DNA of 64,000 nt, from assembly GCA_038087875.1 (NCBI GenBank), contig CM075978.1, forward strand, positions 100,130,001 to 100,194,000, read 5' to 3'. Both the position numbers and the translations under genes were made by a program. Under the pieces are notes generated by a model. It was not told where the DNA came from, did not search any database, and saw only the letters and a list, made by a program, of their open reading frames with translations. Every line of letters starts with the position of its first letter. Position 1 is the stretch's first letter. This document shows positions 23,236 through 64,000 of the stretch, one piece after another. This stretch comes from Malacoraja senta (Eukaryota).

Positions 23236-24756
23236 TGCTGATTTGCTACATAATCTTGTGTCTATCTTTGGACAAACTTGGATTGTTTTCTCTGAAGCAT
23301 CGGATGGTTGAGGGGAGACCTGATAGAAGTATATAAAATAGTATATAAAATGGACAGGGTTGACAGAATCCTTTCTCTCTTCAGAATGTAAATTTCAAAT
23401 ACTAGGTGGATAGATTTAAGGTCAAGGAGAGGGGCCGTTTTAAGGAGAGGGGCCGTTTTAAGGAGATGTGCAAGGCAAGTTTTTTACTCAGGGAGTGGTG
23501 GGTGCCCGGAACGGTGGTAATGAAAGCACATGCAGTGGTGGCATTTAAGAGGATTTTTGATAGGCACATGGATATGCCGAAAAGTGAATTAGATTAGGTT
23601 GGCTGGATATGGACCACATGCGAAGGAGATTGTTCGGAACTGACATTGTGCGCTCAGGAGCCTGTTCCTATGTTGTACTGTTCTATTTCTCTGTTCTATG
23701 TGGCGTTGTGTTTATGCAATAACAATTACATTAACGGTGAATGTTCACCCATTTCCTCTTTGTCGGGCAGCGTCTGGCCTGGCTTGACCTTGTTGGCAGG
23801 CTGGAGTCGGAGGCGAAGCAGGGGTAGATAGATACGCAGACAGGGGTAGAAGCAGGGGTAGGTTGTTGGCCCATATCTTGTACAAGTCCTCAACACCGGA
23901 TACAATCTGATACTCAGCCATTTGGTAGTAACTCTGAAGTGAAGCCATCAGCTTATCTTTGCCAGTGTGCAGGTTACAAAATGACTCATTCGACCGATAA
24001 TTATGAGTTGAGTGCTTCTCATTGGTGCAGAAACACATTGCAGCCTTGGACATGTCATTAGAGACAGGCTTGACCTGGTTGGCAGCATGATCTTATGAAC
24101 AAACAGACATTTGCTGTTTCCGTTCTATATAACCCTGAAATGCTCCCAAAATTAAGCTGCAATGTCCTAACTCACACCACGTGCCATTCACCAATCAGCC
24201 ATGTAGTGGCTGACTACTGTGGCTTCTGGTTAAGAAATACGCTGGAGGAACTCAGCAGGTCAAGCAGCAACTATGGGGGGGAGAAAGAAATTGTTGACAT
24301 TTTGGGTCAAAACCCTGCATCAGGATACATGTCCTCCAGTAAATAGTTGGCTGTCGCTTTGTGTCTTCTGGTTAAGAAACACTCTTGACTTTAAAATTCT
24401 TATCTTTGTTTTGAAATCACTCAAGTGATCTTGCGTCGCTCTATCTTGGAAACCACCTCAGTGACCAAGTCCAAAAGTTTTGGAATTCCTTCCATAAAGC
24501 ACTCCACATTTCGCTCACAACAAACTGCTGGAGGAAGGGGATGGGCAGCATCAGTGGAGATAAAAAACAATTGTCGCTTTCTCTTCCACAGATAAGAGCT
24601 ACTAGGCAATGTCAAATTCTCCCACTTCAATTACGTTGTTTCTCTGAGTGTATTAGAGCTCATCATTTCTGCTGTAATATATTGGCTGTTTTCCTCTCTC
24701 CGTTCATACGGTTTGACCCTCTGGCTTGCCAGATATCCCTCTATTTCACAACTGGA

Positions 24757-25012
24757 GGCAGCACAGTGGTGCAGCGGTAGAGTTGCTGCCTTACAGCGCA
24801 ATGGACCCGGGTTCGATCCTGACTACGGGTGCTGTCTGAATGCAGTTTGTGCGTTCTCCCTGTGACCGCGTGATATTCGGTTTCCTCCCACACTCCACAG
24901 ACGTACAGGTTTGTAGGTTAATTGGCTTGGTAAGAATGTAAAATTGTCACTAGTGTGTGTAGGGTAGTGTTAATGTGCGGATATCGCTGGTCGGCGTGGA
25001 CTTAGTTGGCCA
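24757..25012 (+). mobile_element. V-SINE (truncated copies at ~40701, ~48266, ~60799)
   Basis: tRNA-like head and V domain. Confidence 0.82.
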
Positions 25013-25298
25013 CAATTTTGTGGCTCGGCTACATTTTCACTCACTATATCTGTTCCCAGTAACCCATTGATCAGATAATCACTACGACCTATCTTCCGGG
25101 GCTGGCATCACCCTATCAGAGATAATCTATCTGTCTTCTCAATTGTGTGCCACGCCTTCATGTTTGCTCTCGGCAACGGGTGTACGAGGGCACTTGGGTA
25201 CCTTTGTAGGTAGCCACAAAATGCTGGAGTAACTCAGTGCGACGGGCAGCATCTCTGGAGAGACGGAATGGGTAATGTTTTGGGTCAAGACCCTTCTT

Positions 25299-25721
25299 TT
25301 TTTTTTCTTTTTTTTAAAATATTTTTATTTTATTAGAAGTACAATTGTATACAATCATATTTTCATAATACATTTTATGTACAGCTTCTTATTTTTTTTA
25401 AGTTTTATAATAAAGAAGAAAAAGAAAAAGAAGTTAGATAATGAAATATAGAAAAATGTGAGATATATAGTGTGTGGAAAAGAAAAATAGAGAGTGAAAG
25501 AAGAAAGTTAAAGAATAGAAAATAGGAAAAAGAGAATAAAAGAAGAAAAGGGAAGAAAAAGAAAAAAGAAGTAAGGAGATCTTATTTATAATCTTGACCA
25601 TCCCTCGCCCAGTCACAAGTTAGCTTTTACAATTGTGTTGCACCACATGATTCCAAAAAGACGACAAATGGAGACCAACTCGTTGTGAATTGGTTAAATT
25701 TATCTATTAGGAGGAATCGCA
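25299..25721 (-). mobile_element. 5'-truncated L1 3' end with 17-bp TSD
   Basis: TSD GGGTCAAGACCCTTCTT at 25282-25298 and 25722-25738; poly(T) and TTTATT at the left. Reverse complement RFLLIDKFNQFTTSWSPF aligns by eye to the L1 ORF2 C-terminus near 44260. Confidence 0.85.
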
Positions 25722-26582: not shown

Positions 26583-27407
26583 ACCCATTCCTTCTCTCCA
26601 GAGATGCTGCCTGTCCCGCTGAATTACTCCAACATTTTCTGTCTACCTTCGATTTAAACCAGCATCTACAGTTCTTTCCAACTGGGTACCTTTGTATATC
26701 CACACTTCCTAATCGATCACCATTTAATTAATAGTAATATGTAAATGAACCGGCCTAAGGGCCGTTTTTGTGTTGTGTAGCGCCAAGCGATGATAACTTT
26801 TTTTTCCTGCCAGTGAATATCTTCACATTTATCGGTTATTATAATACATTTGCCATGGTTTTGCCCATTTGCCCAATTTCAACGTCTCAATGATTCCTCT
26901 CTGCGTCCTCCTTATAACTCACAATCTCACTCCATTCAGTGTCATCGGCAAACTTCTACATATTGCATTTTGTTCATTTGTCCAAATTAGTGATGTATGT
27001 TGTGAACAACTCAGGCCAAAGCATGATCCCTGCAGTACCTCACTGCCACATGGGAAGCACCATTGGTCCTGCTTCCTGTTCAATGCCTGGTCAACCAATC
27101 TTCAATCCATGCCAGTGTATTACCCCAATCCTACGTATTTCATTTTTAAATACAACTTTCACATGAAACTTAATTTAAAAACTTGAAAATACAAGTGCAG
27201 CATATCTCCCTTATCTATTCTAGGTTACATGCATTAGTTTAGTTTAAGTTAGTTTAGTTTAGTTTAGTTTAGTTTAGAGATATCGCGTGGAAACAGGCTT
27301 ATCAGCCCAACGACCAACAAGCCCTGAACACTAACGTGCACACACAAGGGACAATTAACAATTTTACAGAGCCAATAAAACTGAACATCTTTGGAGTGTG
27401 GGAGAAA

Positions 27408-28040
27408 GCATTTATTTCAAGAGGGCTTCTATACAAAAACATGGATATAATGCTGAGGCTCTATAAGGCACTAGTAAGGCTGCATTTGGAATATTGTGAG
27501 CAATTTTGGGCACCATAACTGAGTATGTGCTGACTATGGAGAGAGTTCAGAGGATGTTTACAAGAATGATCCCAGGAATGAGTAGGTTAACTTATGATGA
27601 ATGTTTGTCAGCACTGGGCTTCTACTCGCTGGAGTTTAGAAAAATGATGGGAGACCTCATTGAAACATACAGAATAGTGAAAGGCTTGGATAGAGTGGAT
27701 GTGGAGAGGATGTTTCCACTAAAGGGAGAGTCTAGGACTAGAGGTCATTGCCTCAGAATTAAAGGACATTCTTTTAGGAAGGAGATGAGGAGAGATTTCT
27801 TTAGTCAGAGGGCGGTGAATCTGTGGAATTCTTTGCCACAGAAGGCTGTTAGTGGATATTTTTAAGGCAGAGATAGATAGATTCTTGATTAGTACAGGTG
27901 TCAGAGGTTATGGGGAGAGGGCAGGAGAATGGGGTTAGGAGAGAGAGTTAGATCAGCCATGATTGAATGGCGGGGACTTGATGGGCCGAATGGCCTAATT
28001 CTATTCATATTCCTTATGACCTTATGTTCTATTCCTATTC
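27408..28040 (+). mobile_element. CR1 3' fragment (shorter copies at ~48800-49200 and ~61331-61730)
   Basis: LYKALVRLHLEYCEQFW..ERVQRMFTRMIP..SRTRGH..FFSQRAVNLWNSLP. Confidence 0.87.
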
Positions 28041-28044
28041 CTTA

Positions 28045-28185
28045 TGAAACCACAGCTCCTGGAGAAAATCCACGCAGGTCACGGGGAGATCGTACAAACT
28101 CCGTACAGACAGCACCCGTAGTCATGATCGAACCCGGGGCTCTGGTGCTGTAAGGCAGGAACTCTACCACTGTGCCACCGTGCCG
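28045..28185 (-). mobile_element. V-SINE 5' half (copies at ~49205-49343 and ~61730-61868)
   Basis: Reverse complement of the tRNA-like head. Confidence 0.75.
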
Positions 28186-28949
28186 CACAAAGCTACTAGA
28201 TACAGAATATATTGTGTTTGGATGCACGAATACTGGGCTTTACAGTGCATGTAGGAGGTGGAATAGACCCATACAGTTATAGAGCATGGAAACAGGCCGT
28301 TCAGCCCAACTAGTCCATGCCCAACAGGATCCCCATCTAAGTTAGAAACATTTGTCAGAGTTTGACCCATATCCTTTTCATATGGGACTAGCTTAGATGT
28401 GGTAGAATAGACTATGTGAAGACAACAAGGAAATCAGTTCTGGTTACGTAGATGTACAATACAGATTGGGATGTGAGAGAAAACCCAGATGAAATCCACC
28501 CGTTCACAGGGAGAATATACAAACTCCACATAGACAGCGCCAGAGGTCGGGATTGAACCTAGCTCACTGGAGCTGTGGTCTATCAATTAAGCCACAGTCC
28601 CATAAGTAAATAAATATTACAAATAATAAATACCTGTATCTGATATGGATAAGTTTCGATTTACTGACATTGTGTAAACCTTTAGGAATTGGCAAGTGAT
28701 ATTGTGAATGCCCTACATAGCCCACACAGTGAAACAGCAGTGGGAAGAATCAAAGTTACAACCAACATTGGCCTACATTTAAAGCAAACCTGAAACCAGC
28801 TCTAGTAACACCAAGAATAAGAACGGAAAATGCTAGAAATACTCAGCAGGCCAGGAAGCAACTGTGGAGAGAGGCAGAATTAACATTTTAAGCTGCTTTC
28901 AGCATTTTCTATTTTTCTGTCTCAGCATCCACAGTTGTTAGTTTTCAAC

Positions 28950-29238
28950 TAATTTAGTTTAGAGATACAGTGCACAAACAGGCCCTTTGGCCCACCGAGT
29001 CCGCACCGACCAGTGATCACCCCGTACACTAACACTATCCTACACACTGGGGACAATTTACAATTCTTACCAAAGCCAATTAACCTACAAACTATACGTC
29101 TTTGGAAAGTGGGAGGAAACTGGAGCTCCCAGAGAAAACCCACGTGGTCACGGTGAGAACATACAAACTCCGTACAGACAGCACCCGTAGTCAGGATAGA
29201 ACCCTGGTCTCTGGCGCTGTAAGGCATCAACTCTACCC
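28950..29238 (-). mobile_element. V-SINE, unit A only
   Basis: Reverse-complement SINE with (TTTAG) tail. Confidence 0.82.
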
Positions 29239-29789
29239 TTCATTATGATGGCAGCCTTGCCCAGTGCAGTGGGTGCCTGGAACGTGCTGTCAGGGATGTT
29301 GGTGTTGTGACTGGGAGCCGTACTGTACACGGCCCCTTACGGTTTGTTAAGACCCTGAGGCCCAACGTCTTCACACAGGCTAGTAGGTATATGGAACGAG
29401 CTGCCAGGAACGAGGCAGGTACAATGACAACAATCAACAGACATTTGGACAGATACATGGATAGGGATACATGTTTCGAGGGATATGGGTCAAAAGTGGG
29501 CAAATAGGACTCCCGAGTTCAGCATGCTGGTTGGCAGGGATGAGTTGCGCCGAAGGGCATGTCTCTGTGCTGCCTGACCCTCAATAAAGATCATTGTGCC
29601 ATGTGCAGGAACACTGAAGCACATGGTGTCTAGACCCTCTGTTTTCTGGGCATGAAAGAGTGAGTCAGCACTGAGAAGGTGCAGAGGATTTACATCGTAA
29701 GATGATGTGTAGGGATTTATTTGATGCGGTGAGCTGTGGTGGGGATGTGGTTTGCAGGGGCAGAGGTGGGCAGCAAGGAACCTTTACTT

Positions 29790-30090
29790 TAAGCTTTAGA
29801 GATACAGCGCAGAAACAGGCCCTTTGTCCCACCGTGTCCGCACCAACCAGCGATCACCCATACAGCACTATCCTACGCACGAGGGACAATTCTTTTTTTT
29901 TTTTGCCAAAGACAAATAACTTACAAACATACACATCTTTGGCATGTGGGGGGAAACCGGGGCACCCGGAGGAAACCCACGCGTCACAGGGCGAACATGC
30001 AAACTCCGTAGAGGCAGCACCCATAGTCGGGATCGAACCTGAGTCCCTGGCACGGTAAAGCAGCAAAATTACCACTGCGCCACCGTGCCG
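29790..30090 (-). mobile_element. V-SINE (copy at ~62452-62750; truncated in unit C)
   Basis: Reverse-complement full SINE. Confidence 0.8.
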
Positions 30091-31649
30091 CCTGGCCGGG
30101 TAGCAACAGAGAGACCACCAAGCATTTCCGACTCACCACCCCACTTCCACTCATGCAACAAGTTCTCAAGATTATGTTTTATTCCTTTCTTTAATCGGTT
30201 AATGTAAAAAGAATCCAGTTACGCAGTTAAGGCCACCGGTCTACTTAACCTCTCACTCTGCCACAAGTGTGCTCCACCTACAGATCTGTCGGATGGAAGT
30301 ACTTCTGAATTGGTCTACTTTCTGTATGATGCAACCTGCCTCAATCTCGCTAATGCAGCTCTCTAAATGCAGCAGCAATTTAGCCTGAGCTGCCTTCCTT
30401 CTACCGAGGCAGGGCTCACAGCAACAGCACACAGCAATGCCTCTACAACCACTGTGAGAGGCTTGAACAGAAGAGAGGTTAAATGAGAATAATGTTGACT
30501 AACGGAACGTGTAAAGAGATTGAAGAAGGACCTCGACCCCGAATGTCACCTATCCATGTTCTCCAGAGATGCTGCCTGACCCACTGAGATACTTCAGCAC
30601 TTTGGGTCTTTTTGTGTGAAGGAACAAGGTTGGATGGTCTCTGTAAATGATAGCTGCAGAATCTGGTCCAGCACACACTATCTAATAAAATCAAGGTTAT
30701 CACCTGGAATTGTTGAACTCAATGGAGAGATAAGTTGCTGTACCTCATGTTTATGCTGATTTTCATTGTGTGGGAGGCTGAGGGCAGGTGGAGTAAATGA
30801 GCCAAAAATCTAGAGGAGAGCATGAAGTCTTACCGACATTCATCATCAACCAACGATGTCAAGTAAAGGTTAAAGCCCCGTGCCTAGTGTAGCATATCCA
30901 GTTCCTAGAAAAATCCCCTAAACATTCCTCCTCTGAGTGCATCTTGATACCGGGCTGGCAGCAATGGAAGGACACTGCAAGTTATCAGTGGCCACCAGAC
31001 TAACGTTCGGGTCTTGCGGTAATTGTCTGACCATCCTCATGTCTGGAGGCATGGGGCAAATCAAACACAACTAGTTCACAAGCAGGAGAGCAGGTCATTC
31101 TGCTTCTTACACTTGTCCTGCCAATAAAAATTTGACTGAATGTTGATGATGTGAGCTAGAGAATACCAAGAGAAGATCCATGTTCTTCTTGTAACATCAG
31201 GAAATCTATCATGTTGGACAAATGGAGAACAAAGGATCCTCAGTTTCCAATCTCGTCCAAAGGTTTGCCCCCCCATTGGTGCAACGTTGAAGGAGCCGTG
31301 TGCGCTCCTCTGCCTTTAGGAACGGAGCCCGGTCCAGCTGGGCCCCAGGCTGGTGCAGGGCCTCCAGCAGCCCATTCCACCATCGAGGCCGTGCACTCCC
31401 TCCCACGGCCAACTTGGTCATGGAATAGCTAACGTATTGTAGCCACAAAAATAAGGTCTACAATTGTCACGGGTTGCGATGCCTGCTTTACGAGGAGCTA
31501 GGACACCGAAGCAAAAACCTGCTCTCTCATCGTGTTCCTTTGAGCACTGCTCAAAGTGGCATGCTTTTCTTTCTGAGCCACTTGATCCCTAACAAACAGC
31601 CTTAAAATGTGACTGCAAAGTGATCAGTTGGACAACTCTTTTAATCACA

Positions 31650-31925
31650 GCCAGGGTGACGCAGTGGTAGAGTTGCTGCCTTACAGCACCTGAGACTTGG
31701 GTTTGATCCTGACTATGGAGTTTGCATGTTCTCCCTGTGACCACGTGGGTTTTCTCCAGGTACTCCGGTTTCCTCCCACATTCCAAAGACATGCGGGTTC
31801 GTAGGTTAATTGGCTTCTGTAAAGTGTCCCTAGAATCAGGGATAGAATTAGCATACAGGGTGAATATTGGTCGGAGTGGATTAGGTGGGCCAAATGGCCT
31901 GTTTGCATGCTGTATCTCTAAACTA
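31650..31925 (+). mobile_element. V-SINE (copy at ~51448-51723)
   Basis: Head, V domain and tail. Confidence 0.8.
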
Positions 31926-32710
31926 CAACTGACTAATGCAACATGCAGTGCATGTTAAAGGCTTCCAGAGAGCAGACACTACACCAAATGCAATTCTGCA
32001 GATTACCAGTCATTAATCAGCCTATAGGTTACACAGTTTCAGAGTTTTGCTTGTAGTAGATGAACCCAAGGTTTCGCTGCCTTCAACATTATTGTGGAAG
32101 CCTTTCCAGGTGTACAGATTTGCACACAGAAATTAACTTACAATGAAATAATGACAAGACAATCTTTTCTCATGATGTTAAGGAAATATTGATCAGCTCT
32201 TCTTCAAAACACGTCCGTGGGATCTTTTACATCATCCTGAAAGAACAGATGGGCCCAGGGCTAGCAACTCAGCTTGGAAACAGCAGCGACCACTCAGTAT
32301 CTCAGTCAAGAGTCACAAGAGTATAATTGTCATTTATACCGACAACAGAACAATTAATTTCTCACTTGAACCAAATACGTTTCTCACTGAGCTCTGAGAC
32401 TTCACCGATTTCCAACATTTTTTTTCGCCACTGATCCTCTAGCTTAAGCAAAGCATATAGGCAGTGGGCACTGGACAGGGATTGGGATTGGAAGCCTAAG
32501 GGTCTCCTACTTCCCTGGTCAACGTACACCCCAACAGTTATGCCAAAAGGCCACCTTCCATGAAGTGAGGATCTCATCACAAAGACAGCAGAGTGTTAAC
32601 GTCTAAGTTAGATCTACCACTCAAGGCAGGTTGCTGCTTTGATCCTAACTCCGTAATCTAGGTTAGATGTGGTTTTCAGATTAATTGTGCTCTAGATTGT
32701 TCGAAAGAAG

Positions 32711-32854
32711 AGGAAAGTCCATAAATTTGGAGGCTCTTGGGGTCTTAACCCCTGACTCAGTCATCGGTGATATCATTTTCCGTGCAAGGAGGTAGAAACC
32801 CCTCTGCTGCCAGGAACAGGCAGCAAACCACGTGGATGCTGCCCTCTATAAAAG
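32711..32854 (+). promoter_or_regulatory. IL-17 proximal promoter, unit A
   Basis: TATAAAAG at 32847-32854, 125 nt before the ATG. kB-like AGGAAAGTCC at 32711-32720, AP-1 TGACTCA at 32753-32759, E-box CACGTG at 32829-32834. Confidence 0.65.
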
Positions 32855-32971
32855 AGCATGCAGCAAGTACTCAAACAACCAGACTCAAGGCAGACTTCAG
32901 AGCAGACACTGCCTCATTCAGGGGAGACCAACCTCAAGCAACCCAAAAGCGAACAAGCAAGAGACTCCAAG

Positions 32972-32995
32972 ATGTTTTGCAAGGACCGACTTATG
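32972..32995 (+). CDS. IL17A/F: IL-17A/F-like cytokine, unit A, coding exon 1 (MFCKDRLM)
   Basis: AAGATG start downstream of a TATA box. Phase-0 donor ATG|GTGAGT joins exon 2 in frame. A short first coding exon is typical of IL-17A/F genes. Confidence 0.72.
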
Positions 32996-34429: not shown

Positions 34430-34750
34430 GGGCGGCATGTTGGCGCAGTGGTAGAGTTGCTACCTTCAGCGTCAGAGTCCTGGGTTCGATCCTGATTACG
34501 AATGGTGATCCTGATTACGGGTGTTGCCTGTACGGAGTTTGTCTGTTCTCCCCTTGTGGGTTTTCTCCGAGATCTTCGGTTTCCTCACACACTCCAAAGA
34601 CGTACAGGTTTGTAGGTTAATTAGCTTGTTGTAAATGTAAATTTGTCCCTTGTGTGTAGGATAGCGTTAATGTGCGGGGATTACTGGTCGGTACGGACTC
34701 GGTGGGCCGAAGGGCCTGTTTCCGCGCTGTATCTCTAAACTAAACTAAAC
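34430..34750 (+). mobile_element. V-SINE in IL-17 intron 1 (copy at ~54223-54545)
   Basis: Full SINE with (CTAAA)n tail. Confidence 0.85.
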
Positions 34751-37573: not shown

Positions 37574-37618
37574 AGTCCCTATAACAATGAGATGGTTTAC
37601 TAATTTCTCTTCTTGCAG

Positions 37619-52655: not shown

Positions 52656-52772
52656 AGCATGCAGCAAGTACTCAAACAACCAGACTCAAGGCAGACTTCA
52701 GAGCAGACACTGCCTCATTCAGGGGAGACCAACCTCAAGCAACCCAAAAGCGAACAAGCAAGAGACTCCAAG

Positions 52773-52796
52773 ATGTTTTGCAAGGACCGACTTATG
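52773..52796 (+). CDS. IL17A/F: IL-17A/F-like cytokine, unit C, coding exon 1
   Basis: Identical to unit A exon 1, donor GTGAGT. Confidence 0.72.
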
Positions 52797-55700
52797 GTGA
52801 GTGATGAGAATCTGTTTAAAAAATGAGGAGGGAGATCCACCAGATATTGAAGATATTGTAATCTGGAGCAAATGAGGAACCTAGAAGGTCAGGCAGCATT
52901 TGTGGGGGTAGATGGACAGGTGATGTTTTGTGACATCAGCATAGATATGTACAGAAGGTACAGCAAATTAAGCCAGGAACGTTGAAATTTGTGGCCCTTG
53001 AACAGCTGGGCTCGCAAGGAAGACCGTCTTACTTTCTTTTACTAACTGTGCTATCCTGTAGTTGTACACTGCAGACAGCATATGTGTAGTCTTTTTGCTG
53101 AGTGGATAATATACAAACAGAAAAGCTTTTCACGGTACCTTGGTACATGTGACAATAATAAATTAAATCCAAAAGCGGAACCATATCTTGCTTCTCCTTA
53201 GATACGCTACTGTTAAATTTTCAGTGGAATTTTTCAGTGTAGATTGAACTGACAGCCTGTGGACAGAGGATTACCTCAAGCAGCAGAGTGCAGGCATTAA
53301 TATAACACTGAATCAAGGCTGCACTCCCATCTCCACTTGCAGTTTTACCCGAATGCTTAGTGATTGAGGTCTGTATTAATGCAGTGAAAGGACTTTAGCA
53401 CAGATTTTCCTGAGTGTGTTTGGGAATTGGGAAGAGTGGTCACTTAAGGTCGTGATGCAGGGTCTCGATCCGAAATGGCTACCGTCCCTCTACATCCACA
53501 GATGCTACCTGACCTGCTGGGTTCCTCCATCAGACAGGTTCCAGCATCTGTAGTCTCTCGAGTCTCTAGAGCTTAAGATAGGTTATTGTGTGGAGGGAAA
53601 GAAGTTTCCATGTCCAGCAAGGTCCCAAATCATTATGTTTCAAAGACGCAATAAACAGTGAATCTGTGATGTTGGATAAACATGGCCAGAAATCCAGATG
53701 TGCTCTCATGTCCTTTAACCAAATGATGCCATAGGATTACGCAGGTCTAACACAGGGTGGCACAGCTGGTAGAATTGCTGTCTAAGAGCGCCAGACGGGT
53801 TCAATCCTGGCCTCGATTGCTGTCTGAGTGGAGTTTTGTGTGGAGCATATTGAACGCCGGGTTAAGGCTTGAAGGGCCGGGTGGCCTACCCCTGTTCCTA
53901 TTTTCTTGTATCTCGTGAAAACTGTGTTTTTGTTAGAATTATCTTGCCCAAGATTATAGCAGTGAGTTTGTGAATCGCAGAGTCGCGTGAATATCAAACA
54001 TTCTTTCTCGGTGAAGGTTTTATGCTTTTAAGGAGGATGTGGCCTTATCAATGTTTAAACCTCTCACCACTCAATTTGTTTCACTTCAAAGACCACAGCA
54101 GGTTCAAATAAAAACTAATTTGCCAGTATTGCAATAGAAGGAAGTTGTACGCTGCCCAATGCTCCCTTGCAGACTGTCATTGTGGGCTAAGTAACGTTTC
54201 TACCATGGCCTTTCAAATGTGTGGGCGGCATGTTGGCGCAGTGGTAGAGTTGCTACCTTCAGCGTCAGAGTCCTGGGTTCGATCCTGATTACGAATGGTG
54301 ATCCTGATTACGGGTGTTGCCTGTACGGAGTTTGTCTGTTCTCCCCTTGTGGGTTTTCTCCGAGATCTTCGGTTTCCTCACACACTCCAAAGACGTACAG
54401 GTTTGCAGGTTAATTAGCTTGTTGTAAATGTAAATTTGTCCCTTGTGTGTAGGATAGCGTTAATGTGCGGGGATTGCTGGTCGGTACGGACTCGGTGGGC
54501 CGAAGGGCCTGTTTCCGCGCTGTATCTCTAAATTAAACTAAACCTGAACTGCAATAATAAAATGAGGTACTACAAGTAATTCTGCTATAATGTGATTCAT
54601 AAGCAACCTTGCATGACAGAAAATTGTCTTATAGAAACAATTGTGTCAATGGGGCAAAGGGGGTTTTCAACTTAAGAGTTTAACACTTGCAATAAGAAAG
54701 TTTTTTTTACTGCAGGGTTTTCAAATGTGTAGGTCTTTTTATTTGTGTATTTTGTTACTGCAAGCTTAAAACACTAACGGCTGTATGTTATATTGTCTAA
54801 TAGAGTATCACTGCACAAATGTCTGTGGAAGTAATTCCTTGTCAATGTCCATGGCCACTGTGTTCTTAAATGACAATGGAATCCAATTACTGTGGGGAGG
54901 TTACACAGAAACAGCTTTTCATTGGTTTTCTTTTTTCTCCCCAAGATACTTTGTCACATTCCAGACTAACTTTTGTGGAGTTAATTCCTGATCAAAATTG
55001 CATTATAACCAATTTGCCGTGTGTATTAACAATAATGTTCCTTAGTTCATCAGTTCTATTATATCCAATTAGTACTAATTAGTGTACACTGTGTAAATAA
55101 TTGCCTCACACATCTACTTTAAACCTCTCCCCTCTGCTCTTATAGTATTCTACATTTCCTTCCAGGAAAAGGTTCTGACCGTTTACCCTATCTATGCCTC
55201 TCATCATTTTATATATTCTATCATGTCTCCCTTCAATCTCCAACCTAACTTCCTTATAGCCGAAGGTAGACACAAAATGCTGGAGTATCTCAGCGGGATA
55301 GGCAGCATCTCTGCAGAGAAGGAATGGGTGACGTTTCGGGTAGAGATCCTTCTTCAGTCTTCTCTCCAGAGATGCTGCCTGTCTTGCTGTTACTCCAGCA
55401 TTTTGTGTCCACCCAAATTAAACCAGCATCTGTAGTTCTTTCCTACTCCTTATAGCTGATATCCTCTAATCCATATTTTGATATTGCACTTTGCACCCCC
55501 TCCAAAGCCTCCACGACCTTCCTATAATGGGATGACCAGAACTGCATGCAATACTCCAAATGCAGCCTAACCAAAGGTTTTTAAGATGCAACATGACTTC
55601 CTGACTCACAGTGCCATGACCAACAAAGGCAAGAATTTCATCCACCTTCTTTACCACTCTATCTACGTGTGTTGCTGCTTGATGGAGCTATGTGACTTGG

Positions 55701-55837
55701 AATCCAAGATTGCTCTGTACATCCATGCTGTTCAGGGTCTTGCCATTGCGATAATCATGCTGAAGTTGAATAGATTCACAGCCGTGGCAGGTTGTCATCT
55801 GACGCGATGTGCTAAATGGCGCTATGGTTTTTTTCAG

Positions 55838-56052
55838 GCTTCTACTGTGCTGGTCATCTTGGTGCTCGCCGCCCTAACAGAAGCTGCCTCCACGGCAAAA
55901 GGCAAGAAGAACAGAAGGAAAGGGGATCGCATGCGCTTAAAGAGAACCACAAAGTTGGAAAATGTAATGCTGTCTGCCAATTTCCCCAAGTACAATGACC
56001 ACATCCACGAGACTTCCTTCAGGGACCGCTCTCTATCCCCCTGGACCTACAA
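55838..56052 (+). CDS. IL17A/F: IL-17A/F-like cytokine, unit C, exon 2
   Basis: 215 nt, same splice sites; three amino-acid differences from unit A (LLL>LVL, KNN>KKN, EIV>ENV). Confidence 0.9.
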
Positions 56053-56898
56053 GTAAGTTCAAAGTCAAAGTCAATTTTATTACCCAAAGGTGCAGTGAAT
56101 TTACCAGCAGCGATACACTTAAAAAGAATACACAATAAGATTTAACACAAACATCCACCACAGCATTCTTCACCGTGGTGAAAGGCAACAAAGTTCAGCC
56201 CATCCTCCTCCTTTGTTCACCCGTGGTCGGGGCCATAAACCCTCCGTAGTCGCCGCTACGGACAGCCCGATGTACAGGCCCTCTCATAGAGATGATCAAA
56301 ACTCCGACGTCGGGATGATCAAAACTCCGACGTCGGGACGGTCAAACACACTCCGCATCTTGGAGGTTCTGAATCGGCACTTTCCTGAATCGGCACTTTC
56401 AACTCACAACGCCTCCTTCCTTTACCTACAAAAAACACTGAACCACCAGAGAAGCACAATCATACTCCCTCAGTCAAATATTCCATCACTCTCTTACAAT
56501 CTATCTCCATTACGCTGAGTTGTCCATCCCTGCAGGCTCTCTGTCACTGGGAGGTTATGTTCACAAGTTGTAGGAGCACAATTAGGCTATTCGGCCCATC
56601 TGGTCTACTCCACCATTCAATCATGGCTAAATATCTTTCTCTCTCAACCCCATTCTCCTGCCTTCTCCCCATAACCCCAGATACCCTTACTGATAAGTTC
56701 ACCATCAGTCCCACCACACCGTGAGTTGCCCTTCCCTGCAGGCTCTCTGTCACTGGTGATTCTCCATCACTCCTTCCATTGCTAAGGGCACTCATTCACG
56801 CCAGCTCCCCATCACTACACTACCTCCTTTGCTCTCTCGATCACTGTAGGCTGCCGGTCTCTTCTCCCCTTTGGGATCTCTGGTGATCGTACCATCAC

Positions 56899-57087
56899 CA
56901 GAGATATACTAGCTATATTTAAGAGGGAATTAGATGTGGCCCTTGTGGCTAAAGGGATCAGGGGGTATGGAGAGAAGGCAGGTACGGGATACTGAGTTGG
57001 ATGATCAGCCATGATCGTATTGAATGGCGGTGCAGGCTCGAAGGGCCGAATGGCCTACTCCTGCACCTAATTTCTATGTATCTATGT
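56899..57087 (+). mobile_element. Short young CR1 3' insertion in unit C intron 2, ATCAC TSD
   Basis: Absent from unit A (~37075). ATCAC at 56894-56898 and 57088-57092; (TATGTATC) tail as at 602-1057. Confidence 0.88.
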
Positions 57088-57631
57088 ATCACTGAGGACA
57101 CCCCATTTCTCCTGGTTCTCCATCTCTGCCTGTTCACCGACACTCTCCTCGTCACTGTAATCTCTTCATTGCTCTCTCTGTAGCACCCCTCACTTCACAT
57201 TACTTCATCATCATTCCAGAAACCACTGGGCATCTGTATAATAGGCTCTCGATGCCCAGCATGCTTCTCATCCTCTTCCATTGCAGGGTATATGGGCAGT
57301 CACAGTATGGCACAGTGGTGCAGCAAGAGTTGCTGCCTTACAGCGCCAGAGACCTTTGTTCGATTCTGACTAAGGGTGCTTGTTTGTATGTTCTCCCCAT
57401 GATGGCGTGGGTTTTCCCCAGGTGCTCCTGTTTCCTCCCACACCTCAAAGACACACAGGTTTGTAGGTTCATTGGCTTTGGTAAAGATTGTGTATTGTCC
57501 CTAGCATGTAGGATGGTGATCGCTGGCCGGTGCAGACTCGGTGGGCTGAAGAACCTGTTTCCACGCTAAACTAAACTAAATTAAACAGTCCCTATAACAA
57601 TGAGATGGTTTACTAATTTCTCTTCTTGCAG

Positions 57632-57869
57632 GGAGGACGTTGATGCCAACCGCTATCCTTCTTCCATCTACAAGGCAGAGTGTGAGAGCAAGCAATGCTT
57701 CAACATTCGTGGCTTCAAGGATCCAGATCTGAACACCCGTCTGGTCAAGCATGAGATGCTTGTCCTCAGGAAGAAGATGTCACATGATGACAAGATAATT
57801 TACCACGTGGAGAAACTCATGGTCCCTGTTGCTTGTGTCTGTGTCCGTCCGGATGTCGTGCATGCCTGA
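57632..57869 (+). CDS. IL17A/F: IL-17A/F-like cytokine, unit C, exon 3
   Basis: Protein identical to unit A exon 3; intact acceptor and stop. Confidence 0.92.
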
Positions 57870-60800
57870 TAGAGCCAGCTGTAGGTGTGTCAAAGGATAG
57901 TCATGTCCAGCCAACCCCAAGCCAAGTTGAAGCATATCCTTAAGCATTTTAAACTGGAACCAGAGTGGGGGAAATAGCATTTGAATTGGAAGCCAGCCAA
58001 AAGTACCGCTGCAAAGCACTCACTCCTCTGCCCTGCCCCCACCCATTCCCCTCCCCCTGGGTAAGAGGAGGCACTGTCACCTTAGCATTGAAATGACCAC
58101 CAACCATCCTCTGCCTGAGTATAATTGCAGTCAGAGGCATGAAGTTGGCTGTCCTGGAACCTGACTGGTGAGGATTTGGGAAAAACATGATGAAGACAAT
58201 TATCCTCTGCTTCTCCCTCTTAAATTGTTGCAGTAACATAGAAACATAGAGAATAGGTGCAGGAGGAGGCCATTCGGCCCTTTGAGCCAGCACCGCCATT
58301 CATTGTGGATAACAACTGTGCAACAAAGAAACGTAGAAAATTAGAGCAGGCCATTTGGCATTTCCAGCCTGCTCCCTTATTCAATGTGGCCATAGAGTCA
58401 GTCAGCACGTAAACAGGTCCTTCAGCCCAACCTTTCCATACTGAATAAGGTACACCAACTACGCTAGGCCCATTAACCCATGTTTGGCCTATATCCCTTG
58501 AAACCTTTGTACCTGTCCAAATGCCTGTAAAATGTTACGTACCTGCCTCAACCAATTCTTTTAGCAGCTCATTCCACAAACATACTTTGTGAAAATGTTG
58601 CTCCTCGGGTTCCTGTTAAATCTTTCCCCTCTCACCTTAAACATGACCTCTAGTTCTTAACATAGAAACATAGAAAATAGGTACAGGAATAGGCCATTCG
58701 GCCCTTCGAGCCTGCACCGCCATTCAATATGATCATGGCTGATCATCCAACTCAGTATCCTGTACCTGCCTTCTCTCCATACCCCCTGATCCCTTTAGCC
58801 ACAAGGGCCACATCTAACTCTCTCTTAAATATAGCCAATGAACTGGCCTCAACTACCTTCTGTGGCAGAGAGTTCCAGAGATTCACCACTCTCTGTGTGA
58901 AAAATGTTTTTCTCATCTCGGTCTTAAAGGATTTCCCCTTTATCCCTAAACTGTGACACTTTGTCCTGGACTTCCCCAACATCGGGAACAATCTTCCTGC
59001 ATCTAGCCTGTCCAACCCCTTAAGAATTTTGTAAGTTTCTATAAGATCCCCCCTCAATCTTCTAAACTCTAGCGAGTACAAGCCGAGTCTATCCAGTCTT
59101 GATTCCCTTACCCTGCAAAAAAGGCTTTGTGTATTCACCTATCTATTCATCTCATGATTTTAATGCACATTCAAAAGATCACACCTCAGTATCTTGCATT
59201 ACAAGGAATAAAGTCCTACCCTGCCCAACCTCTCCCTGCAGGTCAGTTCATGGCTGATCCTCAGTCTCAATACCACTTTCCTACTCTCTCCGGTCACCCC
59301 TCCACCTCCTTCAATCTCCCAGCCTTCACTATAATCAGCGGCTTTGTCTGTACCTTGGCATGCAAAGGATATTATAGCTCCCAGCACATTAGAAAGGGAT
59401 GCCTCTCTCTCCCTCTCTTTGGAATGGCTCTGCCCCAGGTGCACTCACATCCAATACCAATTTCAGTCAGATAGTCACTGTATACAGACTATTGTAAGTA
59501 CCAGTCTCAGATCTTTGGAGGTTGGGTCATGTGCATTGGATCTATTCTGCAGCTGCTTCATGTCTCGAGAGCGCAGACTGTACACATAAAAATTTCTACG
59601 CAGACTATTCAGATCATTTGCTCCCTCTGCGTTCCCTCTCATTGTTCTTCCAGCCAGGAAAGGAAAAGCGATGGCTTGGAGACAATAGCCGTCCCTGGGA
59701 ACTGCAACTGGGGTCACAACGCATCAGGTGCTTGCAGGCAAATGCAGTCAACTGAATGTTAGCTTAGCAAGGCTTTTTTTTGCACAGTTCTTTAGAGGTG
59801 GACAAGATTGTGGTGGGTTCCGCCCAGATTGTTGAGATAGTATTATCGACAGCAACTGTAAGCTAAGATCGAGGGCATCAGATCTGCAATACAGCCAGTT
59901 GCTATTTGCTATCCATTGTTGACTTGCAACCAGATGGAGTTGGAAACATTGGCTAAAGATATCAACACCAAGTCGGGGCTGACATATTCCCTGCTCACAT
60001 CAGCTGGTCAGGTCGGCCTGCACTCTTCATTCTACCTGGGTGGGAAGCCAAGCAAGATCAGGAATAACCAGAGCTGGTCACCCTGGAGATCTGGGAATGT
60101 GAAGCAAAGGGAAGTTTGAGAATGTATTAATTATTAATTTATTAAGTTATTTTTGATATTTATATGAAATGTTTCTGTCTAAAGAGCCTCACCTGTACAA
60201 TTTAGTTTTAAAATAAAGATTATGTGTTGAGCATTTGCGGCTTCAGTTTGACTATCTTTTCTGGTTTCAAAGGCACGCACACTCTGGGGAAAGATGTTAC
60301 ACAGAAGTACAATCCTATCGCTGGTCCTTCCAGCTAATAGTTCAAAATTCAGACTGCAGGGAACTGAAGGGTTCCTGTCATGTGCATTACAATTTAAGCA
60401 TCTGATATAAATCTCAAGAGAAATGTCCCAAGGGGAGGCCATTCAGCCTATAAAAAGTACATGCTGTCTCCAGCAGGGCTGTCCAATATACCTGCAAGGG
60501 ATTCTTGCACCAATTCACAAGAAAATCACCTATTTCACACCGTCTTCCTGGAAGTGTGCATACTCTTTACCTCAGTTGGTTATTCCATGATTGCACTTTA
60601 ATATTTTTTGCACTACTTCACATTGAACATTAAAAAGTATAGCACAGGAACAGGCCCTTTGGCCCACAAAGTCTATGCTGAACATGATGCCCAGCCAAAC
60701 TAATCTCATCTGCCTGAGCATGATCCATAGTTTTTCTCTCTCCGTTCATACGGTTTGAACATCTGGCTTGCCAGACATCCCTCCATTTCACAACTGCAGG

Positions 60801-62922
60801 CAGCACGGTGGCGCAGCGGTAGAGTTGCTGCCTTACAGCACAAGGGATCTGGGTTCGATCCTGAATACGGGTGCTGTTTGACTGTGGTTTGTGCATTCTC
60901 CCTGTGACCACGTGATCTTCTCTCCAGAGATGCTGCCTGTCCCGCTGAGTTACTCCAGCATTTTCTGTCTACCTTCGATTCTTTCCAACACTCACTGGGT
61001 ACCTTTGTATATCCACACTTCCCAATCGATCACCATTTAATTAATAGTAATATGTAAATGAACCGGCCTAAGGGCCGTTTTTGTGCCGTGTAGCGCCAGG
61101 CGATAACTTTTTTTCCCTGCCAGTGAATATCTTCACATTTATCGATGTTATTATAATACATTTGTCATGGTTTTGCCCATTCGCACAATTTCTTTTTTTT
61201 AATTATAATTTTATTGGAAGCAATTGTACAAAAAAGAATGACTTAACAGTTCTACAACTCTAGCACAGCTTCATTTTTTTAAAAACATTTTACAAACAGA
61301 ATATTAAATTGATATAAGAAAAAAGAGACCTATGATGAACGTTTGTCAGCACTGGGCTTGTACTCGCTGGAGTTTAGAAAAATGAGGGGGGACCTCATTG
61401 AAACATACAAAATAGTGAAAGGCTTGGATAGAGTGGAGAGGAGAGAAACATTCTTTTAGGAAGGAGATTAGGAGAGATTTCTTTAGTCAGAGGGCGGTGA
61501 ATCTGTGGAATCTTTTGCCACAGAAGGCTGTCAGTGGATATTTTTAAGGCAGAGATAGATAGATTCTTGATTAGTACAGGTGTCAGAGGCTATGGGGAGA
61601 GGGCAGGAGAATGGGGTTAGGAGGGAGTGATAGATCAGCCATGATTGAATGGCGGGGACTTGATGGGCCAAATGGCCTAATTCTATTCCTATTCCTTATG
61701 ACCTTATGTTCTATTCCTATTCCTTATGAAACCAGAACTCCTGGAGAAAATCCATGCAGGTCACGGGGAGATCGTACAAACTCCGTACAGACAGCACCCG
61801 TAGTCAAGATCGAACCCGGGTCTCTGGTGCTGTAAGGCAGCAACTCTACCACTGTGCCACCGTGCCGCACAAAGCTACTAGATACAGAATATATTGTGTT
61901 TGGATGCGCGAATACTGGGCTTTACAGTGCATGTAGGAGGTGAACTAGACTCATAGAGCTTGGAAACAGGCCGTTCGGCCCAACTAGTCCATGCCCAACA
62001 GGATCCCCATCTAAGTTAGAAACATTTATCTGAGTTTGACCCATATCCTTTTCATATGGGACTAGATTAGATGTGGTAGAATAGACTATGCGAAGACAAC
62101 AAGGAAATCAGTTCTGGTCACGGAGATGTACAATACAGATTGGGATGTGAGAGAAAACCCAGATGAAATCCACCCGTTCACAGGGAGAATATACAAACTC
62201 CACATAGACAGCGCCAGAGGTCGGGATTGAACCTAGCTCACTGGAGCTGTGGTCTATCAATTAAGCCACTGTCCCATAAGTAAATAAATATAACAAATAA
62301 TAAATATCAGTGTCTGATATGGATAAGTTTCGATTTACTGATATTGTGAAAACCTTTAGGAATTTGCAAGTGATATTGTGAATGCCCTACAAAGTCCTCA
62401 CAGTGAAACAGCAGTGGGAAGTAGTGGGCAGCAAGGAACCTTTACTTTATGCTTTAGAGATACAGCGCAGAAACAGGCCCTTAGTCTCACCGAGTCCGCG
62501 CCAACCAGCGATCACCGCATACAGCACTGTCCTACTCACTAGGGACAATTCATATATTTTTTTGCCAAAGCCAATTAACTTACAAACCTACACGTCTTTG
62601 GCATGTGGGGGGAAACCGGGGCACCCGGAGGAAACCCACGCGTTCACAGCGCGAACGTGCAAACACCGTGGAGGGAGCACCCATAGTCGGGATCGAACCT
62701 GAGACCCTGGCACGGTAAAGCAGCAAAACTACCACTGCGCTACCGTGCCGCCTGGCCGGGTAGCAACAGAGAGACCACCAAGCATTTCCGACTCACCACC
62801 CCACTTCCACTCATGCAACAAGTTCTTAAGATTATGTTTATTCCTTTCTTTAATCGGTTAATGTAAAAAAGAATCCAGTTACGCAGTTAAGGCCACTGGT
62901 CTACTTAACCTCTCACTCTGCC

Positions 62923-63726
62923 CCCAATGTATCATCCATTTGTGATAAATGTCAATCTCAAGAAGCTACTATAGCGCACTCATTTGTTTTTTGTACAAAA
63001 ATTCAAAAATTTTGGATTGAAATGTTTGAAATTTTTGCAAAATTATTTAAAATAAAACTGATACCAAAAGCAGAATGGATTATCTTCGGAACAACGGAAG
63101 ATAGTCCTGAACTAAATGTGTTTCAAAAGAAATTAATAGATTACGGGTTAATAACTGGAAAAAAGTTAATCCTAAAATTCTGGAAAAACGCTCCAATGCC
63201 AACTATAAACATGTGGATTTCAAATATGTTTGAAACATTACACCTAGAAGAGATAAGACTCCTCCTGGCAGGTAAACCAGATCACTTCCACCTGACGGGG
63301 TCTGCATTTATAGAATTATTACAAGTATAGGGTGCAAAAGTACTTTAAAAAAAAAACTGAGGTCAGGTAAAGGGGGATGAAAGCTGGAGAGTTGGTATGT
63401 CCCATTTGCGTGATGCTTATAACAAAGTATTTGTTTTTCACTTTTTTCCTCTTTCTCTTTTTTTGTCCCTTTCGGGTCTATCTCTTAATCCTTTCTTTTT
63501 AATTTCTTTTCTACAGGGTCTCTGTTCTTTCTTGTTGTCACGTTTTTACACCTTCACTATTTTCCTTCACTTTCTCTTTTTTCTTAATCTCAACCTTTCC
63601 TTTTTATCAGTGTAAAAAATGACGGAGTACATTAATTGTAATAAGATATACGTGATGAGTACTAATGTAATTGGTTGTAATGTAATGTACTTCTAATAAA
63701 TAAAAAATAAAAAAAATTAAAAAAAA
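62923..63726 (+). mobile_element. 5'-truncated L1 (same family as 40861-44727) with 13-bp TSD
   Basis: TSD CTCTCACTCTGCC at 62910-62922 and 63727-63739; empty site at 30250-30262. ORF2 C-terminus (CDKC, LIPKAEWIIFG..HLEEIRLLLAGKPDHFH) and an A-rich tail. Confidence 0.94.
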
Positions 63727-64000
63727 CTCTCACTCTGCCACAAGTGTGCTCCACCTACAGATCTGTCGGATGGAAGTACTTCTGAATTGGTCTACTTTCT
63801 GTATGTTGCAACCTGCCTCAATCTCGCTAATGCAGCTCTCTAAATGCAGCAACAATTTAGCCTGAGCCGCCTTCCTTCTACCAAGGCAGGGCTCACAGCA
63901 ACAGCACACAGCAATGCCTCTATAACCACTGTAAGAGGCTTGAACAGAAGAGAGATTAAATGAGAATAATGTTGACCAACGGAACGTGTAAAGAGATTGA

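What the first reader, a model, noticed from the sequence alone, without database searches (positions are those of the whole stretch)
24688..64000. Young tandem amplification of an IL-17A/F-like cytokine gene (at least 4 units)
Seen: a 12.5-16 kb unit repeated head to tail. Two units (A, C) hold intact, spliceable 158-aa genes, one (B) holds only exon 3, and a fourth (D) is entering. Units carry private insertions and deletions, so they are not simply the same reads assembled twice. Known: IL-17A/F genes have a short exon 1 with phase 0 then phase 2 introns, as here. Inference: a recent lineage-specific copy-number expansion of a type-17 cytokine in a cartilaginous fish. By collinearity, another exon 1 should lie about 2.4-2.5 kb beyond the window end.
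Basis: partly seen in the sequence, partly recalled or inferred. Interest (0 to 1): 0.8.

Follow-up and report, generated by a model that had tools for sequence, protein, structure and literature searches.

The report
Skate IL-17A/F cytokine gene array
A skate genome carries four head-to-tail copies of an IL-17A/F-type inflammatory cytokine gene next to MCM3 (three intact, one reduced to its last exon); the first duplication is old and shared with another skate, only the last two copies are young, and this is an ordinary though well-resolved case of cytokine gene turnover.

Summary
The repeat is real in the sequence. There are four head-to-tail units on the + strand:
- A, 26591-40818.
- B, 40819-48383.
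- C, 48384-60916.
- D, 60917 to about 17.9 kb past the window end.

No fifth unit occurs within 100 kb downstream or elsewhere in the assembly. A and C encode intact 158-aa proteins. D encodes an intact, more divergent 161-aa paralogue. B keeps only exon 3.

Exon 3 scores 65 bits on Pfam IL17 (cut-off 24). The best solved relatives are IL-17F and IL-17A. The genes have three exons with a 24-nt first exon, and MCM3 lies 43 kb downstream. All of this fits the IL-17A/F subfamily.

"Young" holds only in part. The head-to-tail joint is also present in Amblyraja radiata, which has three intact tandem genes, so the base duplication predates that species split. What is young is a triplication of a 12.45-kb segment: A, B and C differ by 0.7-1.2%, against 4.6% to D. 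This triplication has a private non-homologous joint at 50049|50050.

Rhinoraja longicauda duplicated the gene independently.

Read evidence was inconclusive, and there is no expression evidence. This is a new member of a known kind.

The parts
26591..40818 (+). Unit A: the first unit, with a 5' spacer that differs from the others (4-17% from C and D)
   Evidence: Self-BLAST; three-way alignment in windows; the unit start is where similarity to 48384 and 60917 begins.
32847..32853 (+). TATAAAA box 125 nt upstream of the ATG of gene A. The same box is at 52648 in C, in D, and in all three A. radiata genes.
   Evidence: Sequence comparison. Promoter function is inferred, not shown.
32972..32995 (+). 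Gene A exon 1 (8 codons, MFCKDRLM; GTGAGT donor; phase 0)
   Evidence: It is the only ATG + open frame + GTRAG candidate in 30000-36042. It is identical in C and 98% identical with flanks in D.
36043..36257 (+). Gene A exon 2 (215 nt; signal peptide, basic region, RSLSPW motif; GTAAGT donor; phase 2)
37619..37856 (+). Gene A exon 3 with stop codon (IL-17 cystine-knot domain)
   Evidence: Pfam PF06083 at 65.5 bits, E = 5.9e-18; IL-17F and IL-17A in PDB, E about 1e-12.
40861..44727 (+). 5'-truncated L1-like LINE inserted 42 bp into unit B. It has an uninterrupted 1182-aa endonuclease/reverse-transcriptase frame (40790-44335), an AATAAA signal, a poly-A tail and a 12-bp target-site duplication GAGTTACTCCAG (40849-40860 and 44728-44739).
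   Evidence: Pfam RVT_1 at 134 bits and Exo_endo_phos_2; ends and duplication read directly.
40819..48383 (+). Unit B: the first 412 bp of a unit (interrupted by the LINE) joined at 45097 to the equivalent of A 37529. An 8.7-kb deletion removed exons 1 and 2.
   Evidence: (joint with about 1 bp of microhomology).
45187..45424 (+). Orphan exon 3 of unit B. The frame is open, the acceptor is intact, and it has one replacement (Met to Val) relative to A and C. No exon 1 or 2 lies upstream, so it is a gene fragment.
   Evidence: (IL17 at 64 bits).
48384..60916 (+). Unit C, a chimera. The stretch 48384-50049 is D-like (0.7-1.3% divergence) and 50050-60916 is A-like (0.4-2.3%).
50049..50050 (+). Joint j2: the non-homologous join of a D-type spacer (equivalent to 62574) to A-type sequence (equivalent to 30243). 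It marks the young segmental duplication.
   Evidence: (the two halves lie about 330 bp apart in A. radiata and Rhinoraja). Contigs of two read sets both end exactly at 50050, which is weak support.
52773..52796 (+). Gene C exon 1
55838..56052 (+). Gene C exon 2 (4 differences from A, 3 of them replacements)
57632..57869 (+). Gene C exon 3 with stop codon
60917..64000 (+). Start of unit D. The unit runs to window-equivalent 81933. Its intact 161-aa gene has exons at 71159-71182, 74646-74872 and 77795-78029, all beyond the window.
62923..63723 (+). L1 3' fragment private to unit D, with a 13-bp target-site duplication

Best explanation
This is the IL-17A/F locus of a skate, lying 43 kb upstream of MCM3, expanded into a four-unit head-to-tail array. 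Three units (A, C, D) carry complete three-exon genes with a conserved TATA box. Each gene encodes a secreted-type precursor: a signal peptide, a basic stretch, and an IL-17 cystine-knot domain with the four knot cysteines. Unit B is a dead fragment that keeps only exon 3.

Inferred history:
1. An old tandem duplication produced two units through a non-homologous joint (j1) that contains about 166 bp of SINE-derived filler. This joint is shared with Amblyraja radiata.
2. Recently, a 12.45-kb segment was duplicated through a second non-homologous joint (j2, 50049|50050). The segment runs from 2.7 kb upstream of the first gene to 1.66 kb into the second unit.
3. The segment was copied once more by unequal crossing-over. 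A and B share a 98-bp deletion.
4. An 8.7-kb deletion then removed exons 1-2 of the middle copy, and an L1-like element inserted between A and B.

The products presumably act like IL-17A/F: dimeric pro-inflammatory cytokines that signal through IL-17 receptors. With three paralogues, heterodimers are possible. This functional part is inferred from family membership only.
For: - Repeat structure and joints.
- Gene models with canonical splice sites and open frames.
- Family assignment: Pfam IL17 at 65 bits against a cut-off of 24. IL-17F and IL-17A are the best solved relatives at 50 bits, against 32 bits for IL-25. The nearest database proteins are batoid proteins named 'interleukin-17A-like' or 'interleukin-17F-like', at 63-82% identity.
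- Synteny: MCM3 exons at G000:C2:100251380-100260600 on the minus strand, identified as MCM3 at 135 bits against 98 bits for MCM7. The three-exon structure, a 24-39 bp first exon and mcm3/paqr8 synteny are described for IL-17A/F genes in PMC8276262.
- Age of the base duplication: j1 spans 16887-16977 of the tiled A. radiata locus, with collinear flanks.
- Young triplication: A-B 0.67%, A-C 0.87%, B-C 1.16%, and 4.6% to D. C is chimeric. j2 is absent from both other skates.
- Against an assembly artefact: no N gap lies between A and the first 8 kb of D, and independent assemblies of two other skates also hold tandem copies.
Against: - No long reads or raw reads were available. The only read test used short Logan contigs swamped by SINE copies, with no single-copy baseline. 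Contig depths of about 42-51, 94 and 135 fit both 'three paralogues' and a haplotype mix.
- Some B-private variants (47121, 47153) were not seen in those contigs.
- No RNA run of this organism was found, so the exon 1 choice, the splicing and the expression of each copy are unverified.
- Trees group the copies by species. The shared joint therefore has to be reconciled with the trees by invoking gene conversion or repeated turnover, which is inferred rather than shown.
- The order of the young events rests on few sites (21-36 differences).
Confidence: 0.8

Rival explanations
1. Assembly artefact. A and C (and B) would be allelic haplotypes, or mis-assembled reads, of one unit. The true array would then have only two units: one A/C-type and D.
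For: - A, B and C differ by only 0.7-1.2%.
- The same window holds a likely gap-flanking false duplication: 7798-10367 against 10568-13999 around the N run.
- The contig-depth ratios are uninformative without a baseline, and some B-private variants were not seen.
Against: - The sequence is contiguous, with no N, from A through B and C into D.
- The units are linked by distinct, specific joints: j1 three times, j2, the 45097 deletion joint, and an L1 insertion with a target-site duplication. A haplotype collapse or expansion would not create these.
- C is a chimera of D-type and A-type sequence.
- Contigs of two samples both end exactly at 50050, as expected if that sequence has two left-hand contexts.
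- No extra haplotig copy of exon 3 exists elsewhere in the assembly.
- A. radiata independently shows three units.
Confidence: 0.12
2. Wholly independent, species-specific amplification. All four units would have arisen in this lineage after it split from Amblyraja.
For: In trees of 4.8 kb of gene and intron sequence, the copies cluster by species with 100% support.
Against: - The head-to-tail joint j1, including its 166-bp filler, is present and collinear in A. radiata.
- The derived 12-nt shorter exon 2 is shared by A, C and all three A. radiata genes. D keeps the long form found in Rhinoraja, Pristis, Narcine, Mobula and the whale shark.
- In the exon 2 to 3' part of the alignment, D is not resolved as sister to A + C.
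Confidence: 0.06

Closest known systems
IL17A-IL17F gene pair of mammals and birds, and the adjacent IL-17A/F1-IL-17A/F2 pair of teleosts
   Same: - IL-17 cystine-knot cytokine genes with three exons and two introns and a short (24-nt) first exon.
- Neighbouring paralogues on one chromosome, close to MCM3 (PMC8276262).
   Different: - All copies here are in the same orientation and head to tail.
- The copies are much more alike (0.9-8% protein-coding divergence), and one of them is a fragment.
- The mature proteins have only the four knot cysteines. The extra cysteine seen in human IL-17F at the aligned 'GCS' position is absent.
Annotated 'interleukin-17F-like' genes of Amblyraja radiata (XP_032880906.1, XP_032882303.1, XP_032882302.1) on CM021373.1
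   Same: - Same locus: upstream and downstream flanks are collinear at 90-95% identity.
- Same head-to-tail joint j1, same promoter/TATA box, and the same short exon 2 as A and C.
   Different: - Three units with periods of 18.6 and 22.7 kb.
- No j2 joint, no exon-3-only fragment, and no long-exon-2 (D-type) gene.
- The third gene has a 15-nt in-frame deletion. The middle gene is annotated as 119 aa but has a full 158-aa frame.
Two 'interleukin-17A-like' genes of Rhinoraja longicauda (XP_078262111.1, XP_078262112.1)
   Same: Tandem, same-orientation IL-17A/F-like genes at the orthologous locus, about 96-97% identical to each other.
   Different: - Different duplication joint. The unit runs from the equivalent of about 31400 to about 86693, so it includes 4.7 kb of sequence that here lies downstream of the last unit.
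- No j1. Both genes have the long exon 2. This is an independent duplication.

Membership tests
IL-17 cytokine family (Pfam PF06083) | Significant match to the IL17 domain profile | tested here: met
   Exon 3 of A and C scores 65.5 bits, B 64 bits (cut-off 24). D scores 59.8 bits in the genome scan.
IL-17 cytokine family (Pfam PF06083) | Four conserved cysteines of the cystine knot (C-x4-C ... C-x-C) | tested here: met
   AECESKQC and VACVCV are present in A, C and D and align to the IL-17F knot cysteines.
IL-17 cytokine family (Pfam PF06083) | Secreted protein with an N-terminal signal peptide | tested here: inconclusive
   A hydrophobic stretch (ASTVLVILLLAALTEAAS) follows the 8 residues of exon 1. 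No signal-peptide predictor was available.
IL-17A/F subfamily | Closer to IL-17A and IL-17F than to IL-17B, C, D or E | tested here: met
   PDB search gives IL-17F and IL-17A at 46-51 bits and IL-25 at 32 bits, with no other member listed. The nearest database proteins are named IL-17A-like or IL-17F-like. A full family tree was not built.
IL-17A/F subfamily | Three coding exons with a short first exon (24-39 bp) | tested here: met
   Exon sizes are 24, 215 and 238 nt (227 nt for exon 2 in D), with intron phases 0 and 2. The criterion comes from PMC8276262.
IL-17A/F subfamily | Conserved synteny with MCM3 | tested here: met
   MCM3 exons lie 43-52 kb downstream of unit D on the minus strand. 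PKHD1 was not found nearby with the G8 profile.
IL-17A/F subfamily | Dimer that binds IL-17RA/IL-17RC and induces inflammatory genes | not testable with these tools
   No experiment was possible and no complex prediction was run.
Genuine tandem segmental duplication (not an assembly artefact) | A specific head-to-tail joint, repeated, and present in an independent assembly | tested here: met
   j1 is at 40818|40819, 48383|48384 and 60916|60917, and at 16887-16977 of the A. radiata locus.
Genuine tandem segmental duplication (not an assembly artefact) | Reads spanning units, and depth proportional to copy number | tested here: inconclusive
   Only short Logan contigs could be laid. The unit boundary lies in a SINE with depths in the millions, and there is no single-copy baseline.
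'Young' amplification | Low divergence between all units and absence from related species | tested here: not met
   The feature holds for A, B and C (0.7-1.2%) and for joint j2, which is private to this genome. It fails for D (4.6%) and for joint j1, which is shared with A. radiata.

The most novel reading that the evidence does not exclude
The IL-17A/F locus of skates may be a hotspot of recurrent copy-number turnover under diversifying selection. Three skate genomes each carry a different array: four units here, three in A. radiata, and two by an independent joint in Rhinoraja. The copies are homogenised within each species. Pairwise dN/dS is about 0.6-1.3, and replacements concentrate in the exon 2-encoded N-terminal part. 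The paralogues (158-aa A/C type and 161-aa D type) could then form distinct homo- and heterodimers, a cartilaginous-fish parallel to the IL-17A/IL-17F split.
Probability: 0.25. Interest if true: 0.5.

Novelty: new member of a known kind. Interest (0 to 1): 0.3.

Why it matters
IL-17A/F cytokines drive mucosal and anti-bacterial inflammation. How the type-17 arm looked in early jawed vertebrates is still being worked out from cartilaginous-fish genomes. This locus shows that skates hold several intact, fast-evolving IL-17A/F genes at the conserved MCM3-linked site, and that copy number differs between related skates.

The joints are resolved well enough to order the events and to design copy-specific assays. 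That helps annotation, since orphan exon 3 copies and under-annotated copies exist, and it helps expression studies. It does not reveal a new kind of system. Tandem IL-17A/F paralogues are the rule in vertebrates, and automatic annotation already lists the multiple copies in A. radiata and Rhinoraja. The held literature has no paper describing them.

Tried and rejected
1. **SINE-SINE homologous recombination as the origin of the unit joint and of B's internal joint.** Rejected. The alignments show unrelated sequence on the two sides, with at most 1-5 bp of microhomology.
2. **Read test.** The four runs were all short Logan contigs. SINE and LINE copies gave depths in the millions, no piece spanned a joint, and there was no single-copy baseline. 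This gives no verdict on copy number.
3. **RNA evidence.** No run of this organism is on record as RNA. The one 'RNA?' run of a relative looked like DNA.
4. **PKHD1 as a second synteny marker.** The G8-domain scan found no hit near the locus. This is uninformative.
5. **More units or more IL-17 genes nearby.** None lies within 100 kb downstream or 20 kb upstream.
6. **Other genes in the flanks.** The long open frames there are retroelement remnants only.
7. **Copies in Pristis pectinata and Narcine bancroftii.** Only one gene was seen within 10 kb on either side. This is weak evidence for single copy. No DNA was available for Mobula.


Full report
**Observation**

The window is G000:C2:100130001-100194000 of a 1.94-Gb assembly. 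Self-BLAST of the window, and of the window extended by 100 kb downstream, shows a head-to-tail repeat on the + strand from about 26.6 kb to window-equivalent 81.9 kb. The main matches are:
- 30243-37079 with 50050-56898, 97.7%.
- 37075-39912 with 57088-59924, 99.1%.
- 37529-40860 with 45097-48425, 99.2%.
- 47475-50049 with 60022-62574, 98.0%.
- Weaker matches (92-97%) of all of these to 69400-81933.

The only N runs are at 10368-10567 and, beyond the window, at 69199-69398. A, B, C and the first 8 kb of D are therefore one contiguous stretch of sequence. No further unit occurs in the next 82 kb. A whole-assembly scan with the exon 3 peptide and with Pfam IL17 finds only these four copies, plus one unrelated IL-17 locus on another chromosome.

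**Genes**

Reading the + strand gives an RSLSPW-containing exon and a cystine-knot exon. Only one ATG + open frame + GTRAG candidate exists upstream of them, at 32972-32995.

| Unit | Exon 1 | Exon 2 | Exon 3 | Product |
|---|---|---|---|---|
| A | 32972-32995 | 36043-36257 | 37619-37856 | 158 aa |
| C | 52773-52796 | 55838-56052 | 57632-57869 | 158 aa |
| B | none | none | 45187-45424 | fragment |
| D (beyond window) | 71159-71182 | 74646-74872 | 77795-78029 | 161 aa |

- All exons have canonical splice sites, and the intron phases are 0 and 2.
- A and C differ at five coding positions, three of them replacements.
- B's exon 3 has an intact acceptor and one replacement.
- D is intact. It has a 12-nt longer exon 2 and a 3-nt shorter exon 3, and is about 83% identical in protein to A.
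- A TATAAAA box sits 125 nt upstream of each ATG and is conserved in A. radiata.

**Family**

- Exon 3 scores 64-65.5 bits on Pfam IL17, against a cut-off of 24.
- Against all solved structures, the best matches are IL-17F and IL-17A (46-51 bits, E about 1e-12). IL-25 scores 32 bits.
- The nearest database proteins (63-82% identity over exon 3) are batoid and whale-shark proteins that NCBI names 'interleukin-17A-like' or 'interleukin-17F-like'.
- An MCM gene lies on the minus strand 43-52 kb downstream of unit D. Its exon matches MCM3 at 135 bits, against 98 bits for MCM7.
- Three exons, a 24-39 bp first exon and mcm3/paqr8 linkage are the published hallmarks of IL-17A/F genes (PMC8276262). 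IL-17A/F is already known from the elephant shark (PMC6795676).
- The mature proteins hold only the four knot cysteines and a basic N-terminal stretch with RLKR. This agrees with an earlier scan note (s1-187682).

I file the genes as IL-17A/F-like. A full-family phylogeny was not built.

**Anatomy of the repeat**

*Joint j1.* The head-to-tail joint reads '...gtgaccacgtgat|CTTCTCTCCAGAG...'. It lies at 40818|40819, 48383|48384 and 60916|60917.
- Its right side is the start of the unit, equivalent to 26591 in A, where it sits inside a very abundant repeat.
- Its left side is about 166 bp of a tRNA-type SINE head. This follows the point where similarity to the end of unit D stops (40652, 48217, 60750, all equivalent to 81933).
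- The two sides share no homology, so j1 is a non-homologous joint with filler and not a SINE-SINE crossover.

*Unit C is a chimera*.
- From 48384 to 50049 it is 0.7-1.3% from D and 4-17% from A.
- From 50050 onwards it is 0.4-2.3% from A and 1-7% from D.
- The switch is a second non-homologous joint, j2 (50049|50050). It joins the equivalent of D 62574 to the equivalent of A 30243 and skips about 330 bp.

*The young repeated segment.* It is about 12.45 kb long, the exon 3 to exon 3 distance from B to C. It runs from 2.7 kb upstream of the first gene to 1.66 kb into the next unit.

*Unit B.*
- It is the 3' part of the middle copy. The first 412 bp of a unit are joined at 45097 to the equivalent of A 37529, with about 1 bp of microhomology. 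This 8.7-kb deletion removed exons 1-2 and the middle j2.
- A 3.87-kb 5'-truncated L1-like element lies 42 bp into unit B. It has an uninterrupted 1182-aa frame, a poly-A tail and a 12-bp target-site duplication.

*Unit D* has a private L1 fragment (62923-63723), a 5-kb insertion followed by the assembly gap, and two more insertions.

**Ages**

Over the 3.1 kb shared by all four units:

| Pair | Divergence |
|---|---|
| A-B | 0.67% |
| A-C | 0.87% |
| B-C | 1.16% |
| A, B or C to D | 4.6-4.7% |

A and B share a 98-bp deletion relative to C and D. The inferred order of events is:
1. j1 duplication.
2. j2 duplication.
3. One more copy by unequal crossing-over.
4. The deletion in B.
5. The L1 insertion.

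The last steps rest on few sites.

**Related genomes**

*Amblyraja radiata.* Three annotated IL-17F-like proteins sit in one 90% cluster. Their loci tile 67 kb of CM021373.1.
- The locus is collinear with this one, at 90-95% identity, from upstream of A to downstream of D.
- It holds three complete genes, all with the short exon 2. The middle one is annotated as only 119 aa but has a full 158-aa frame.
- It contains j1 with collinear flanks at 16887-16977.
- It lacks j2. The two halves of j2 lie about 330 bp apart, which is the ancestral arrangement.

*Rhinoraja longicauda.* It has two genes 14.2 kb apart. Its repeat unit runs from the equivalent of about 31400 to about 86693. It therefore includes 4.7 kb that here lies downstream of the last unit, and it lacks j1. 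This is an independent duplication.

*Other batoids.* Pristis and Narcine show one gene within 10 kb on either side.

*Trees and indel.* Trees of gene plus intron sequence group the copies by species with full support. In the 3' half, D is unresolved against A + C and the Amblyraja copies. Two facts stand against independent origin: j1 is shared with A. radiata, and the derived short exon 2 occurs in A, C and all Amblyraja genes, while D and the more distant batoids keep the long form. Together these point to an ancestral array of two or more units that has since been homogenised and re-expanded separately in each lineage. Concerted evolution is inferred here, not demonstrated.

*Selection.* Pairwise dN/dS is 0.4-1.3, that is, weak constraint or diversifying selection, as is common for cytokines. 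The counts are small.

**Is it an assembly artefact?**

The direct test could not be done. The two runs of the same organism are kept only as short contigs, the boundaries lie in SINEs with depths in the millions, and the 5.9-kb stretch holds no single-copy baseline. Contig depths of about 42-51, 94 and 135 in run X2 fit a 1:2:3 sharing of sequence among copies, but they would also fit a haplotype mixture. Some B-private variants were not seen.

Indirect evidence favours a real array:
- The sequence is contiguous.
- There are five distinct specific joints.
- C is chimeric.
- Contigs of both samples end exactly at 50050.
- No stray haplotig copy exists elsewhere in the assembly.
- Independent assemblies of two other skates also hold multi-copy arrays.

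I put the artefact reading at about 0.12.

**Function**

No RNA data for this organism were found, so expression and the exon 1 assignment remain predictions. By family membership, A, C and D should encode secreted dimeric pro-inflammatory cytokines. B cannot encode one.

**Verdict**

The array itself is old, is shared with another skate, and is already visible in public annotation of relatives. This is a new member of a known kind and of modest interest.

Noticed in passing
window 7798-10367 and 10568-13999, flanking the N run 10368-10567: The two sides of the assembly gap repeat each other: 7798-9631 matches 10568-12397 at 98.4%, and 9627-10367 matches 13235-13999 at 94.8%. This looks like a gap-flanking false duplication or a real local duplication. 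It shows that the assembly can hold such structures next to gaps.
   Followed up: partly
window 40861-44727: A 5'-truncated L1-like LINE with an unbroken 1182-aa endonuclease/reverse-transcriptase frame, an AATAAA signal, a poly-A tail and a perfect 12-bp target-site duplication. It is a very recent insertion, so this LINE family is probably still active in this genome. An 82% identical copy sits in the A. radiata array.
   Followed up: yes
G000:C6:48215066-48215290 (L020:5066-5290): A second IL-17 domain exon on another chromosome (63 bits on Pfam IL17). It is closest to IL-17A among solved structures (49.8 bits) and only about 30% identical to the array's proteins. It is probably a separate IL-17A/F-type or other IL-17 gene.
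   Followed up: partly
G000:C2:100251380-100260600, minus strand (L010-L011): MCM3 exons lie 43-52 kb downstream of the array. This is the conserved IL17A/F-MCM3 linkage.
   Followed up: yes
A. radiata CM021373.1:64821825-64888795 (L017, L018, L015): The middle A. radiata gene is annotated as a 119-aa protein (XP_032882303.1) but has an intact exon 1 and a full 158-aa frame. The third gene has a 15-nt in-frame deletion that removes NIRGF.
   Followed up: yes
Rhinoraja longicauda CM130171.1:54166712-54205510 (L019, L016): Two tandem IL-17A-like genes (96-97% identical units, 14.2-kb period) made by a duplication whose joint differs from the one in this genome and in A. radiata.
   Followed up: yes
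window 18171-18550 and 19867-21053: A 40-bp-period tandem repeat, and a 1.2-kb degenerate G-rich repeat (GC skew 0.66 in 20001-22000) with long open frames on both strands and no Pfam match.
   Followed up: no
window 1072-2918: A retroelement remnant: the tail of a reverse transcriptase followed by a tyrosine-recombinase-like N-terminal domain, which suggests a DIRS-like element. Both matches are below the Pfam cut-offs.
   Followed up: partly
window-equivalent 64170-69198 (L005), then N 69199-69398: A 5-kb insertion private to unit D, without a Pfam match in its longest frame, ending at an assembly gap. It replaces about 0.8 kb present in A and C.
   Followed up: no
runs X3 and X18 laid on window 44700-50600: Contigs of related organisms (B and F) lie on the unique parts of the unit at about 4-5% divergence. 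Both skip 45790-45861, a 72-bp stretch present here, and each place shows one variant only. Copy number in those species is unknown.
   Followed up: no
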